The position numbers were made by a program, and so were the translations under genes. 64,000 nt of DNA from Isurus oxyrinchus (taxonomy: Eukaryota): the NCBI GenBank assembly GCA_026770705.1, contig JANJGN010000052.1, positions 1,674,001-1,738,000 of the forward strand, read 5' to 3'. The notes below the pieces were generated by a model. The model saw only the letters and a program-made list of their open reading frames with translations. It did no database searches and was not told where the DNA came from. Shown here in pieces: positions 25,881 to 45,532 of this stretch (positions within the stretch are counted from its first letter, which is position 1; each line of letters begins with the position of its first letter).

Positions 25881-25962
25881 AACTTCAGAGTTAGAAGCTG
25901 AGGAAATATCTGGGAGTGGACAATGATCGGGAAATCTTACTTCCCCCTGTCACTTCTCCAAG
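25881..25962 (+). CDS. Siglec leader exon (ATG 25923; [13 protein letters not shown], phase 1)
   Basis: Acceptor ctttcag, donor CAAG|gtaata. Ends in SLLQ like the paralogous leader at 7608 and joins the V exon in frame. The hydrophobic core is short. Confidence 0.6.
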
Positions 25963-43100: not shown

Positions 43101-45532
43101 GTGAGTGTATCGCTTCTCGAGATACATCGGAGCATCATTGTAAACCTGTAGTGCAGTAATTAATGGCTGTTTTTACAGGTAGAGACTCCAGTAAATGGAC
43201 AGTAGGATTGTTCACGGCTGGGATCATGTTGAGTGTTTTCCTGGCTGGAATCTTCATCTTCATCTGTGTGAGAAAGTAAGTCTGAAGATTTAACTTGATT
43301 TTAATATAAACATTTGCTTCAATGTTCTTTCCTTAAGTCGGTGATTGTTTCCCTTGGGAGCAGCACCAGGTCCCTCTCTGTAAGTGGTCCCTGTGTCCAC
43401 TCTGATCCGGAGAGAACCTTTCATTGTCCTGTATCCAGGTAAACAATCACGACACCCAGAGATTCCTTGCTCTGCACGATTACTCCGGGATAAATATTTG
43501 CTTCAATGTTCTTTCCTGAAGTCGGTGATTGTTTCCCTTGTGTTAAGCGCTAGATGCCTCTCCGTAACTGGTCTCTTTTGTCCCTTACGATCCAGACAGT
43601 GTTTTTCATTGCCCGTTATCCAGATGAATAATAATCAGTTGCTGTGATCTGGAAGGTGCTGCCTGAAAGGGCGCTGGAAGCAGATTTAATAGGATCTTTC
43701 AAAAGGGGAATTGGATAAATACTTGAAGGGGGAACATTTGAAGGGCTATGGGGGGAAGAGCAGGGGTGGAGGGGGGGTCAAAGATATGGCGTGTCATTAT
43801 AATGATATTATACCTTAGGCTTATTTATTGTACAAGAAACAAAGCACCAATCGCTCACAGGGATTGGGTGAGAATGTTAATGATTTGTTTATCAAGACTC
43901 GGCACGAGAACAGTTATACATACGGAGAAAGATTGAAGGCATCAGAGCCATGAGTGTGTGTTCTGCTCAAAGCAAAAGTCAAACTAAGATTGGATCACAT
44001 GACACACTTCCATTATAGTGATGTCACGCTGATACCCCTTATTGGAACTAGAGACAGTCCATTCGTTGGTGTAAGGTTACACTGGGCTCTGTGTCTGTGC
44101 TGCACTGACTCTCTGCTATATGATAACCACAGTGTGATATTGTGTTATTGCAGGAGAAAGACAGCGATGGAGGAGAGAGTTTCAGGGACCAGTGACATTG
44201 TATTGACCCCCAGTCCACTCTCTGTGAAGCACCAGGTACAGGAGCTGTTTACACTCACTCCAAAGCTTCTATCTCAGTGTGTAGACAACACATGTCCCAG
44301 ATTCCCAGCCAGGTTACCCACAGATATCTAACTGTGTAGTCAGATATGGCTCAGTATGTAGCATTGTCTCTCGCTCCCTCCCCCTCTTCCCTCCATCACT
44401 CGCTCTTTGACCAGAAACCTGAACGCAATAATGACAAGGCACCTGATGTCAGTAGTGAGGGAGTGCTGCACTGTCCTAGGGTCTGTGCTGAGGGAGTGCT
44501 GGAGTGTCAGAAGGTCAGTACTGAGGGAGTGTTGCACTGTCAGAGGGTCTGTACTGAGGGAGAGCTAGACTGTCAGAGGGTCAGTACTGAGGGAGTGCTG
44601 CGCTGTCATAGGGTCAGTACTGAGGGAGTGCTGGACTGTCGGACGGTCAGTACCGAGGGAGTGCTGCACTGTCGGAGGGTCAGTACTGAGGGAGTGCTGC
44701 ACTGTCGGATGGTCAGTACTGAGGACAGTACTGAGTGAGTGCTGCACTGTCAAAGAGTCCATTTGCAAGGGGTGCTGCCCTCTTGAAGGGGCAGTTCCGA
44801 GGGAGTGCTGCACTGTCAGCAGAGAGCACTGAGAGAACATTGCAGTGTTCGAGGTGCCTCTTTCAGAATAGTTGTATAATGCTGACCATGTTTACCATCT
44901 TATCTGGTCCCATGGCCACATTTCCAACACTGTAGCAGTGTCTCCCTTCAATAAAATTCCTTCATTGGCGTGAGGTTCTTTGTGTGTCTGTGTTTGTGAA
45001 TAATGGGGCACAAATCTCATGATTGGGATGGTAACATAGGACTTCAAGACTCAGGTCTGCGATAGCGAGAGAGATTACATGATAAATAGAGAGAGAAAGC
45101 AAGAGAGAGAGAGAGAAAGAGAGACAGAGAAAGAGATTGAATAAAAGGAGACAGAGAAAGAGAGTGAAAAAGAGGGTTAAACCCATTGAGACATGACTGA
45201 CAGTAACGAGGCTGCAGAATAACTTAACCCTATCAGTGCCAGTAAATGATGTGAGGATGTCTTCTGTTTCTATTTCTCTGTAGGGTAAACAGAACGTGCT
45301 GATTACTGAGCCCCGGAACACAACCAGAGACACAACTAGTGAGGGGGAGACCCCAGCTCCCCGGGGTCTCTCTGAAGGTCCAGTGGGAGGCGATGTTGGA
45401 CATGGGAACCCCGACAAACCCGACGAGCTTTTCTACGCCAACATCAACTTTTCAAAGCTGCCCAGCGGTGACAGGACTGTGCACAGGAGCGAGGACACGG
45501 AATACGCACAGATCAGGTTCCAGAAAAACTGA
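25923..45532 (+). CDS. Siglec-family (CD22/MAG/CD33-like) type I inhibitory receptor with 13 Ig domains. Spliced CDS: 25923-25962, 29315-29680, 30052-30348, eleven 282-nt exons within 31060-42362, 43179-43275, 44154-44235, 45284-45532 (4233 nt, about 1410 aa)
   Basis: All exons have canonical AG/GT boundaries and compatible phases, giving one open frame. The architecture V-set + C2 + 11 Ig + TM + two tyrosine motifs is Siglec-type. Orthology cannot be assigned by eye. Confidence 0.85.
29315..29680 (+). CDS. Siglec N-terminal V-set Ig exon (sialic-acid binding domain)
   Basis: CVQIPC, GDCSL and [10 protein letters not shown] (essential Arg codon AGA at 29617-29619), then RYSY. Boundaries ccag| and |gtaagt; 366 nt. 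Confidence 0.92.
30052..30348 (+). CDS. Siglec domain-2 C2-type Ig exon
   Basis: KPTI...SCTFNTTC (extra inter-domain Cys)...LTW...SVLTL...LSCRV. Boundaries tag| and |gtaagt; 297 nt. Confidence 0.9.
30470..30925 (-). repeat. 33-bp DeuSINE-derived tandem array (same family at about 3620-3945, 17310-17860, 20515-20800, 44450-44830, 51230-51510, 61620-61920)
   Basis: Unit cagtgcagcactccctcagtactgaccctctga; source of the [11 protein letters not shown]-type spurious ORFs. Confidence 0.9.
31060..31341 (+). CDS. Tandem Ig exon repeat 1 of 11
   Basis: 282 nt, phase 1/1: APQNLS...[15 protein letters not shown]...[14 protein letters not shown]...ITVE; donor gtgagt. Confidence 0.9.
31965..32246 (+). 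CDS. Tandem Ig exon repeat 2
   Basis: 282 nt, open frame, canonical splice sites; starts GPHNLS. Confidence 0.9.
32873..33154 (+). CDS. Tandem Ig exon repeat 3 (most divergent core)
   Basis: 282 nt, open frame; private changes NLMW, HRN, TNF, CEAE. Confidence 0.9.
34370..34651 (+). CDS. Tandem Ig exon repeat 4
   Basis: 282 nt, open frame; starts APRNPS. Confidence 0.9.
35465..35746 (+). CDS. Tandem Ig exon repeat 5
   Basis: 282 nt, open frame; starts APQDVS. Confidence 0.9.
36562..36843 (+). CDS. Tandem Ig exon repeat 6
   Basis: 282 nt, open frame; starts APQDVS. Confidence 0.9.
37643..37924 (+). CDS. Tandem Ig exon repeat 7
   Basis: 282 nt, open frame; starts [11 protein letters not shown]. 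Confidence 0.9.
38705..38986 (+). CDS. Tandem Ig exon repeat 8
   Basis: 282 nt, open frame; starts APQSLSINS. Confidence 0.9.
39778..40059 (+). CDS. Tandem Ig exon repeat 9
   Basis: 282 nt, open frame; starts APQDLS. Confidence 0.9.
41033..41314 (+). CDS. Tandem Ig exon repeat 10
   Basis: 282 nt, open frame; starts APRNLS. Confidence 0.9.
42081..42362 (+). CDS. Tandem Ig exon repeat 11 (membrane-proximal)
   Basis: 282 nt, open frame; contains GNSTMII; followed by a distinct intron without a CA tract. Confidence 0.9.
43179..43275 (+). CDS. Siglec transmembrane exon ([33 protein letters not shown])
   Basis: Boundaries ttttacag| and |gtaagt. About 23 hydrophobic residues with no charged residue, followed by basic stop-transfer residues. 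Confidence 0.88.
44154..44235 (+). CDS. Siglec juxtamembrane cytoplasmic exon ([27 protein letters not shown])
   Basis: Boundaries ttgcag| and |gtacag; phase 2/0 links the TM and terminal exons in frame. Confidence 0.82.
45284..45532 (+). CDS. Siglec terminal exon with ITIM-like ELFYANINF and distal TEYAQIRF
   Basis: The motif pair resembles the CD33-type LxYxxL.F plus TEYSEI arrangement; ends at TGA. Confidence 0.88.
   Translation, partial: GKQNVLITEPRNTTRDTTSEGETPAPRGLSEGPVGGDVGHGNPDKPDELFYANINFSKLPSGDRTVHRSEDTEYAQIRFQKN

What the first reader, a model, noticed from the sequence alone, without database searches (positions are those of the whole stretch)
25923..45532. Giant 13-Ig-domain inhibitory Siglec built by recent tandem amplification of one Ig exon
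Seen: V(Arg) + C2 + eleven almost identical 94-aa domains + uncharged TM + LFYANI/TEYAQI tail, all in frame. Established: CD22 has 7 Ig domains, MAG has 5, and Siglec-1 has 17 divergent domains and no ITIM. Inference: a very long homopolymeric stalk with a CD33-type inhibitory tail fits none of these. It would project the lectin domain beyond the glycocalyx to sense trans sialic acid. This may be an undescribed, length-variable Siglec family of cartilaginous fish.
Basis: partly seen in the sequence, partly recalled or inferred. Interest (0 to 1): 0.85.

Follow-up and report, generated by a model that had tools for sequence, protein, structure and literature searches.

The report
Shark Siglec with eleven repeated stalk exons
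A shark gene for an inhibitory sialic-acid-sensing immune receptor (Siglec type) really does carry eleven almost identical copies of one Ig-domain exon in a row, giving a very long stalk; relatives with 1 to 8 copies are already predicted automatically in other sharks and rays, but I found no paper describing them.

Summary
On the + strand the exons run: leader, V-set, C2, eleven 282-nt Ig exons, an uncharged TM exon, a short cytoplasmic exon and a tail exon carrying LFYANI and TEYAQI. All phases fit and all exons are open, which counts to 1410 codons.

All four N gaps begin 7-9 nt into an intron and resume at the expected mid-intron position. No exon or reading frame depends on them, but the copy number (11) is only "as assembled".

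The V exon is a Siglec lectin domain. Its best matches in sequence and fold are sialoadhesin, MAG and CD33-type Siglecs, and the key Arg is aligned.

RNA-type contigs show repeat-exon-to-repeat-exon splices (including two variant-specific ones), TM-to-cytoplasmic and cytoplasmic-to-tail splices. They mix paralogues and do not show one V-to-tail transcript.

Close relatives are automatic gene models in many elasmobranchs with 1, 2, 4 or 8 copies of the same domain. The window's copies form their own clade, so the expansion is lineage-specific or the copies evolve in concert.

The family is therefore not new to databases, but this is its most extreme member so far and I found no publication on it. 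The scan noted similar arrays elsewhere in this genome. Function is inferred.

The parts
25923..25962 (+). Leader exon ([13 protein letters not shown] plus 1 nt, phase 1), donor GTAATA
   Evidence: The N-terminus matches Mustelus asterias XP_078093144.1 ([21 protein letters not shown]). No RNA was laid on this exon.
29315..29680 (+). V-set lectin-domain exon (366 nt, phase 1-1). It has 3 Cys, and the Arg in YYFRIEF aligns with sialoadhesin Arg97.
   Evidence: AlphaFold model pLDDT 91.8. The top PDB folds are sialoadhesin, MAG, Siglec-7, CD33 and Siglec-10, with TM 0.81-0.90.
30052..30348 (+). C2-set exon (297 nt, phase 1-1), 3 Cys, 2 N-glycan sequons
   Evidence: (PF08205, 7.5e-9). It is 80% identical to the same domain of Stegostoma XP_059497404.1.
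31060..42362 (+). Array of eleven 282-nt Ig exons, R1-R11. Each is AG...GTGAGT, phase 1-1 and open. There are 38 N-glycan sequons in all. Unit spacing is 905-1497 nt.
   Evidence: (Ig_3 6.9e-13, I-set 6.5e-11). R-to-R splice junctions appear in RNA-type contigs, including the variant-specific R6-R7 and R7-R8 junctions (table 5c).
31349..31482 (.). N gap in the intron after R1. It starts 7 nt after the donor and resumes at about position 305-330 of gap-free introns.
32254..32392 (.). N gap in the intron after R2 (starts +7)
33164..33449 (.). N gap in the intron after R3. It starts +9 and resumes at about position 66 of the intron type that follows R9.
41323..41524 (.). N gap in the intron after R10. 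It starts +8 and resumes at about position 215 of gap-free introns.
43179..43275 (+). Transmembrane exon (97 nt, phase 1 to 2): [32 protein letters not shown], no charged residue in the span
   Evidence: Spliced to 44154 (GT..AG, skips 878) in three RNA-type runs, and seen as loose ends in X6. Matches the TM of Stegostoma XP_059497404.1.
44154..44235 (+). Cytoplasmic exon 1 (82 nt, phase 2 to 0): (K)[27 protein letters not shown]
   Evidence: (joint 43275>44154; loose end at 44236 continues into the tail exon)
45284..45532 (+). Tail exon with ITIM LFYANI and distal TEYAQI (TxYxxI); the stop codon ends at 45532
   Evidence: In X6 a loose end joins 44235 to the first letters of this exon. It is 62% identical to the tail of the Stegostoma Siglec-10 model.

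Best explanation
This is an intact gene, most likely expressed, for a type-I membrane receptor of the Siglec family in a shark.

Shown:
- The domain order is leader, V-set lectin domain with the conserved arginine, one C2 domain, a stalk of eleven near-identical Ig domains each on its own symmetric phase-1 exon, an uncharged membrane span, and a tail with an ITIM (LFYANI) and a distal TxYxxI motif (TEYAQI).
- The V domain is Siglec-like in sequence and in predicted fold.
- Repeat exons are spliced to one another in RNA-type contigs, and TM, cytoplasmic and tail exons are spliced as modelled.
- The copies in the window are each other's closest relatives.

Inferred:
- The V domain binds sialic acid through the arginine.
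- Phosphorylated tail tyrosines recruit SHP-type phosphatases and dampen the cell.
- The 13-domain, heavily N-glycosylated stalk (38 sequons in the repeats) holds the lectin head some 40-50 nm from the membrane. That would favour ligands on other cells or microbes over neighbours on the same membrane.

Origin: the stalk arose by tandem duplication of a roughly 1-kb exon-plus-intron unit within this lineage. The exon cores have since been kept alike, probably by gene conversion, while the introns and the first ~47 nt of each exon drifted.

The gene is one member of a large elasmobranch Siglec expansion that lies beside hepcidin genes.
For: - Exon anatomy and phases.
- Gaps are intronic.
- Siglec identity of the V exon: phmmer gives sialoadhesin 7e-16, MAG 7e-14 and Siglec-5/8/CD33 1e-11 to 1e-13, with Arg97 and Trp2 aligned. 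Pfam gives V-set and Ig_CD22. The model has pLDDT 91.8 and its top 22 PDB folds are all Siglec V domains.
- Cysteines: 3 in the V exon and 3 in the C2 exon.
- RNA-type contigs: R-end to R-start junctions in X6, X17 and X18, including C|ATTCA (only R7 starts this way) and T|ACGCA (only R8 starts this way). Joint 43275>44154 with GT..AG ends in X17, X18 and X19. X6 loose ends join TM to the cytoplasmic exon and the cytoplasmic exon to the tail exon. One X18 contig joins 42362 to the TM exon.
- Homologues with the same order of parts: Stegostoma, Chiloscyllium, Mustelus, Scyliorhinus and Mobula models. A direct repeat-to-TM junction occurs in Chiloscyllium GCC37911.1.
- Lineage-specific clade of all 14 window copies, support 89/86.
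- Exon core 96-99% identical against introns 78-90% and exon 5' end 89%; dS of the core 0.02.
Against: - No single transcript from V to tail was seen.
- All runs were held as assembled contigs, so read depth could not test copy number, and contigs mix paralogues. At 44201 most RNA contigs carry C where the window has T.
- The R11-to-TM junction rests on one contig from the other organism, with a 2-nt offset and possibly letters in between.
- Four gaps lie inside the array, and R2 and R3 sit on short islands.
- dN/dS among copies is about 0.7, so there is little sign of purifying selection on individual copies.
- Ligand binding, signalling and stalk geometry are untested.
Confidence: 0.72

Rival explanations
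1. The gene is real, but the number and order of repeat units is an assembly product. A scaffolded assembly with estimated gaps may have added, dropped or reordered near-identical 1-kb units, so the true stalk may be shorter or longer than eleven domains.
For: - There are 12 N gaps in 64 kb, four of them inside the array.
- R2 and R3 lie on ~770-nt islands between gaps.
- The uninterrupted stretch 33450-41322 begins and ends with the same intron type plus exon: R4 and R10 exons are 98.6% identical and their upstream introns 97%.
- Depth could not be used because every run was held as contigs.
Against: - Seven units (R4-R10) are contiguous without any gap.
- All eleven units differ from one another by 1-6% in exons and by more in introns, so none is a plain duplicate.
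- The gaps resume at the expected intron position.
- The variant-specific R6-R7 and R7-R8 junctions occur in RNA-type contigs.
- A zebra-shark model from a different assembly has 8 such domains.
Confidence: 0.3
2. The eleven exons are cassettes. Because each is symmetric (phase 1-1), any subset can be skipped in frame, so the usual proteins may be much shorter and the 13-domain form rare.
For: - All units are phase 1-1 with identical splice sites.
- CA-rich tracts follow each donor.
- Short contigs cannot count exons per molecule.
Against: - The only repeat-exon junctions seen are end-to-start joins, two of them between adjacent units (R6-R7, R7-R8).
- No junction from C2 or an early unit to the TM exon was listed, but many rows were not shown and C2 was not in the stretch laid.
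Confidence: 0.3
3. The array is old rather than recent. Units duplicated long ago, and the exon cores look young only because gene conversion keeps them alike (concerted evolution).
For: - Introns are 78-90% identical and fall into several types, while exon cores are 96-99% identical.
- Silent-site divergence in the core is 0.02.
- There is a sharp step in identity about 47 nt inside the exon.
- The first residues read through the donor ([10 protein letters not shown]) are the same in the zebra-shark model and in this window's R7 unit.
Against: - Intron identity is lowered by microsatellites and indels.
- Some neighbouring units are nearly identical in introns too (U5/U6 99.7%), which shows recent duplications as well.
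- Other species carry only 1-2 copies.
Confidence: 0.45
4. It is a non-functional or decaying copy in a fast-turnover gene cluster, and the RNA signal comes from paralogues.
For: - dN/dS is about 0.7 among copies.
- Most RNA contigs differ from the window at 44201.
- Fragments of the gene's 3' end lie upstream at 18013-21186.
Against: - All 17 exons are open with canonical splice sites and matching phases across 19.6 kb.
- X6 contigs at 99% identity or more cover this locus's introns as well as its exons.
Confidence: 0.07

Closest known systems
Elasmobranch automatic gene models of the same subfamily. Examples: Stegostoma tigrinum XP_059497277.1 ('hemicentin-1-like', 1463 aa), Stegostoma XP_059497404.1 ('Siglec-10', 751 aa), Chiloscyllium punctatum XP_072409577.1, Mobula birostris XP_072122227.1, Mustelus asterias XP_078093144.1.
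   Same: - The leader, V (66-79% identical), C2, repeat-type Ig domain, TM and ITIM/TxYxxI tail come in the same order.
- The repeat domain is present in 1, 2, 4 or 8 copies.
   Different: - This gene has eleven copies, the most seen.
- It lacks the one or two distinct membrane-proximal Ig domains of the Stegostoma and Mobula models.
- Its copies form their own clade.
- No exact match exists, so this species' gene is not in the protein collections searched.
Sialoadhesin (Siglec-1)
   Same: - It is the best sequence and fold match of the V domain (7e-16; TM 0.87-0.90, rmsd 1.7 A), with the aligned Arg and N-terminal Trp.
- It also has a very long multi-Ig stalk.
   Different: - Established knowledge: Siglec-1 has 17 divergent domains and no tyrosine motifs.
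- Here there are 13 domains, eleven of them near-identical, and an ITIM-bearing tail.
CD33-related Siglecs (CD33, Siglec-5, -7, -8, -10)
   Same: - They have a V plus C2 head with extra cysteines.
- The tail has a membrane-proximal ITIM followed by a distal TxYxx(I/V) motif near the C-terminus.
- The V domains match at 1e-10 to 1e-13.
   Different: - Mammalian members have 2-5 Ig domains.
- Fish genomes are said to lack them (PMC7226832, teleost-focused).
- Orthology was not tested, and the neighbouring gene here is hepcidin, not the mammalian CD33 cluster's surroundings.
MAG (Siglec-4) and CD22 (Siglec-2)
   Same: - In humans HAMP, MAG and CD22 are neighbours on 19q13.12 (my own knowledge), and a hepcidin exon lies in this window.
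- The MAG V domain matches at 7e-14, and MAG Ig4 is among the best matches of the repeat domain.
- CD22 is an ITIM receptor.
   Different: - MAG has 5 and CD22 has 7 divergent domains.
- The CD22 V domain matches only weakly (8e-5).
- The tail motif pattern is of the CD33 type.
Exon-cassette copy-number repeats in other proteins, such as apolipoprotein(a) kringle IV-2 and complement receptor 1 long homologous repeats (my own knowledge)
   Same: Near-identical coding units are repeated in tandem in frame, which lengthens the protein.
   Different: These are different protein families, and size polymorphism between individuals is proven for them but untested here.

Membership tests
Siglec family (sialic-acid-binding Ig-type lectins) | N-terminal V-set Ig domain of the Siglec type | tested here: met
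   Pfam V-set 4.7e-13 and Ig_CD22 3.9e-10. Best PDB sequences are sialoadhesin, MAG, Siglec-5/8 and CD33. The model has pLDDT 91.8, and the top folds are all Siglec V domains, TM up to 0.90.
Siglec family (sialic-acid-binding Ig-type lectins) | Conserved arginine on strand F that binds the sialic-acid carboxylate | tested here: met
   The Arg in YYFRIEF aligns with Arg97 of sialoadhesin (YNFRFEI). Trp2 is also aligned, and Trp106 is replaced by Tyr.
Siglec family (sialic-acid-binding Ig-type lectins) | Unusual cysteine pattern: three Cys in the V domain and three in the first C2 domain (intrasheet bond plus interdomain bond) | tested here: met
   There are 3 Cys in the V exon and 3 in the C2 exon, at the positions aligned with sialoadhesin's SC..IPC and C in strand E. 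The bonding itself is not shown.
Siglec family (sialic-acid-binding Ig-type lectins) | Binds sialylated glycans | not testable with these tools
   This needs a recombinant protein, a glycan array and an Arg mutant.
CD33-related Siglec subgroup | Cytoplasmic ITIM plus a distal ITIM-like (TxYxxI/V) motif | tested here: met
   LFYANI and TEYAQI lie in the last exon, 45284-45532. The ITIM signature is as quoted in PMC7226832, except that this motif ends in I.
CD33-related Siglec subgroup | Groups with mammalian CD33-related Siglecs in a V-domain phylogeny | tested here: inconclusive
   Only bit scores are available: sialoadhesin 61.6, MAG 55, Siglec-5 52, Siglec-8 50, CD33 49. No tree with mammalian sequences was built.
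CD33-related Siglec subgroup | Small ectodomain (2-5 Ig domains) | tested here: not met
   13 Ig exons as assembled.
Siglec-1 (sialoadhesin) | 17 divergent Ig domains and a tail without tyrosine-based motifs | tested here: not met
   There are 13 domains, eleven of them 94-99% identical, and the tail has two tyrosine motifs.
CD22 (Siglec-2) | Seven Ig domains, a CD22-type V domain, and several ITIMs | tested here: not met
   The CD22 V domain matches only at 8e-5 to 2e-4. The domain number and the tail pattern differ.
Elasmobranch repeat-stalk Siglec subfamily (database models only, no formal name) | V 66-79% identical, the same C2, one or more copies of the same ~94-aa Ig domain, the same TM and tail exons | tested here: met
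   Repeat-domain hits score 104-174 bits in 11 models from 10 species.

The most novel reading that the evidence does not exclude
Sharks carry inhibitory Siglecs with a CD33-type tail at the hepcidin/MAG/CD22-type locus. Their stalk is a copy-number-variable array of one Ig exon, kept uniform by gene conversion. Stalk length, and so the reach of the lectin head and the balance between same-cell and other-cell ligands, would then be a rapidly evolving and possibly polymorphic trait. It would also mean the ITIM plus ITIM-like tail predates the split between cartilaginous and bony vertebrates, contrary to the usual statement that fish lack such Siglecs.
Probability: 0.3. Interest if true: 0.7.

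Novelty: new variant of a known kind. Interest (0 to 1): 0.52.

Why it matters
- Reach of the lectin head: Siglecs are the main receptors that read 'self' sialic acid. How far the head stands from the membrane is thought to decide whether it sees ligands on its own cell or on others. So far only the non-signalling Siglec-1 has a very long stalk. An inhibitory Siglec with a 13-domain stalk, in a family where the same domain occurs 1 to 11 times, is a natural series for testing that idea.
- Origin of CD33-type Siglecs: reviews say CD33-type inhibitory Siglecs are absent from fish. This gene bears on that question.
- Exon arrays in receptor genes: it is a clear case of exon-level tandem amplification with homogenised exon cores in a vertebrate immune receptor.

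Tried and rejected
1. I first read 44076-44237 as the TM exon and found a stop in the frame that fits R11, which suggested a frameshift. RNA joints showed the real acceptor is at 44154 and the real TM exon is 43179-43275. The 'frameshift' was my error. A 93.5% identical copy of this region at 19306-19627 has the same layout.

2. I intended to use read depth to count copies. All 24 runs offered were held as assembled contigs, so depth is meaningless.

4. I searched the window for the membrane-proximal Ig exons of the Stegostoma Siglec-10 model. None is present.

5. Three literature searches for shark or elasmobranch Siglecs found nothing specific, apart from one passing mention in the whale-shark genome paper.

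Exons were handled one at a time by reference, and the length was counted arithmetically.

Its junction was seen only as a loose end.
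Full report
**What is there**

A direct-repeat search finds eleven copies of a ~300-nt element spaced 905-1497 nt apart between 31.0 and 42.4 kb. Cutting them at their splice sites gives eleven exons of exactly 282 nt. Each is preceded by AG, followed by GTGAGT, in phase 1-1 and free of stops. They are 93.6-98.9% identical in DNA, and each encodes a 94-residue Ig domain (Pfam Ig_3 6.9e-13, I-set 6.5e-11).

Upstream lie three more exons:
- A short leader exon, 25923-25962.
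- A V-set exon, 29315-29680.
- A C2 exon, 30052-30348.

Downstream lie three more:
- A TM exon, 43179-43275 ([25 protein letters not shown], no charge).
- An 82-nt cytoplasmic exon, 44154-44235.
- A tail exon, 45284-45532, with LFYANI and TEYAQI and the stop.

The phases run 1, 1-1 (13 times), 1-2, 2-0, 0. The lengths add to 4233 nt, which is 1410 codons plus the stop. Every search used single exons by reference.

**The gaps**

The window has 12 N runs, four of them inside the array. Each of these four starts 7-9 nt after a donor site (after R1, R2, R3 and R10). The sequence behind each gap matches gap-free introns at the place where their CA-rich tract ends, at intron positions of about 305-330, 325-350, 66 and 215. 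The gaps therefore replace the microsatellite part of one intron each, and no exon or frame depends on them.

What remains open is the number of units:
- R4-R10 are on one uninterrupted stretch (33450-41322).
- R1 is contiguous with V and C2, and R11 with TM and tail.
- R2 and R3 sit on ~770-nt islands between gaps.
- Whole units could hide in a gap.

Because every unit is symmetric, the frame holds whatever the number.

**What it is**

The V exon is a Siglec lectin domain.
- By sequence, its best solved relatives are sialoadhesin (7e-16), MAG (7e-14), Siglec-5, Siglec-8, CD33 and Siglec-10. CD22 (8e-5) and Siglec-15 lie far behind.
- The arginine of YYFRIEF aligns with Arg97 of sialoadhesin, and the N-terminal Trp is aligned as well.
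- A model built on 30 homologues has pLDDT 91.8. Its 22 best PDB folds are all Siglec V domains (sialoadhesin TM 0.87-0.90, rmsd 1.7 A).
- The V and C2 exons each carry three cysteines, which is the Siglec pattern.
- The tail has an ITIM and, close to the C-terminus, a TxYxxI motif. This is the arrangement known from CD33-related Siglecs.

**Relatives**

A full HMMER search with the V exon found 37 proteins below 1e-30. The closest (66-79% identity) are automatic gene models from Mustelus, Scyliorhinus, Cetorhinus, Carcharodon, Stegostoma, Chiloscyllium, Pristis, Mobula, Hypanus, Rhinoraja and others. They carry a mix of names: Siglec-8/10/12/13/14, CD33-like, MAG-like and hemicentin-1-like.

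None is identical to the window, so this species' gene is not in those collections.

A profile of the window's repeat domain finds the same domain in these models 1, 2, 4 or 8 times. The 8-copy case is the 1463-aa zebra-shark model XP_059497277.1. The nearest relatives outside elasmobranchs (~40%) are gar 'MAG-like' and paddlefish 'CD22-like' models.

Unlike the Stegostoma and Mobula models, this gene has no distinct membrane-proximal Ig exons. A direct repeat-to-TM join like ours is present in a Chiloscyllium model.

**Expression**

One reads call was allowed, and all runs were held as contigs. I laid 41700-44440 (R11, TM and cytoplasmic exons) on four RNA-type runs of two coded organisms. 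The results:
- Junctions of repeat-exon end to repeat-exon start occur in X6, X17 and X18. They include C|ATTCA, which only R7 can give, and T|ACGCA, which only R8 can give, so they read as R6-R7 and R7-R8.
- A GT..AG joint 43275>44154 occurs in X17, X18 and X19.
- X6 loose ends join TM to the cytoplasmic exon, and the cytoplasmic exon to the first letters of the tail exon.
- One X18 contig joins 42362 to the TM exon, with a 2-nt offset.

These joints also corrected my own first, wrong reading of 44076-44237 as a frameshifted TM exon.

Limits:
- Contigs mix paralogues. At 44201 most carry C where the window has T, and one X19 contig joins a different Ig exon to the TM exon.
- No molecule from V to tail was seen.

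**History of the array**

In a tree of 40 repeat domains, all eleven copies plus three inverted copies at the window's start form one clade (89/86). This clade is sister to Scyliorhinus torazame and Mustelus. Six of the eight zebra-shark copies form a clade of their own. The amplification is therefore lineage-specific, or the copies evolve in concert.

Within the array:
- Exon cores are 96-99% identical.
- The first 47 nt of each exon are only 89% identical, and the introns 78-90%. The introns fall into several types.
- Silent-site divergence in the core is 0.02, and dN/dS is about 0.7.

Silent sites that are far more alike than the flanking introns point to gene conversion of the exon core rather than to protein-level selection alone. 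'Recent' is therefore not established.

**Surroundings**

- A hepcidin exon lies at 62355-62504 (Pfam 29.6 bits, cut-off 27). In humans HAMP, MAG and CD22 are neighbours (my own knowledge), so the locus resembles that region.
- The window also holds an inverted partial array (261-2663, minus strand), a distant V-like exon (8467-8760) and stray copies of the cytoplasmic and tail exons (18013-21186).
- A 14-kb segmental duplication links 3380-17615 with 50990-61928.
- Earlier notes of this scan report many Siglec genes, paired activating/inhibitory forms and two further repeat arrays in the same genome. I did not test those.

**Mechanism**

Shown: the domain order, the Siglec-type head, the splice pattern and the tail motifs.

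Inferred: the head binds sialic acid through the arginine. The two tail tyrosines, once phosphorylated, recruit SHP-type phosphatases. The 13-domain stalk with 38 N-glycan sequons in its repeats holds the head roughly 40-50 nm out, which would favour ligands on other cells or microbes.

**Novelty**

The teleost-centred literature states that fish lack CD33-related Siglecs (PMC7226832). I found no paper on shark Siglecs.

Noticed in passing
window 261-539, 1352-1630, 2385-2663 (minus strand): Three more open copies of the same Ig exon lie in inverted orientation, and they belong to the same clade as R1-R11. The sequence at 1-253 matches the stretch downstream of R11. Gaps again follow the donors. 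This is probably the end of a second, inverted array that runs off the window.
   Followed up: partly
window 18013-18252, 19306-19627, 20947-21186 (+): Stray copies of the 3' end lie upstream of the gene. There are two tail-exon copies (69-73% aa identity, ITIM region) and one copy of the cytoplasmic exon region (93.5% nt identity). No TM exon accompanies them.
   Followed up: partly
window 8467-8760 (+): A distant V-set exon (26-33% identical to the gene's V; Pfam V-set 4e-5, below cut-off) that belongs to another Ig-type gene or remnant.
   Followed up: no
window 62355-62504 (+): A hepcidin-type last exon (QKR cleavage site, 8 Cys, longer loop with an N-glycan sequon). The Pfam Hepcidin hit is 29.6 bits against a cut-off of 27.
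   Followed up: partly
window 3380-17615 and 50990-61928: A direct segmental duplication of about 11-14 kb at 94-97% identity. It has internal 37-nt-type tandem arrays and strong GC skew at 6-8 kb and 54-56 kb.
   Followed up: no
window 20511-20795, 30468-30927, 44448-44817, 17311-17870, 61608-61925: The same 33-nt minisatellite (unit GTCAGTACTGAGGGAGTGCTGCACTGTCAGAGG or its complement) recurs in introns and between genes, in both orientations.
   Followed up: no
window 42988-43079 and 43632-43734: Very high summed contig depth in all four runs, with many loose ends. These are pieces of dispersed repeats in the intron between R11 and the cytoplasmic exon, not exons of this gene.
   Followed up: no
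window 44201: Most RNA-type contigs of X6, and all of X17-X19, read C where the window has T. Most of the signal on this exon therefore comes from paralogues or another allele.
   Followed up: no
window 43177 (run X19 contig, 488 nt): One contig joins a different Ig exon (ending ...VYLWVK, like the membrane-proximal domain of the Stegostoma Siglec-10 model) to a TM exon and a cytoplasmic exon that match this gene's at 97-99%. This points to a paralogue with a different stalk sharing the same 3' exons.
   Followed up: partly
window 31060-42362: Twenty of the 39 variable exon sites lie in the first 47 nt (the A-strand/linker part, [12 protein letters not shown]...), and most change the amino acid. 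The rest of the exon is nearly invariant.
   Followed up: partly
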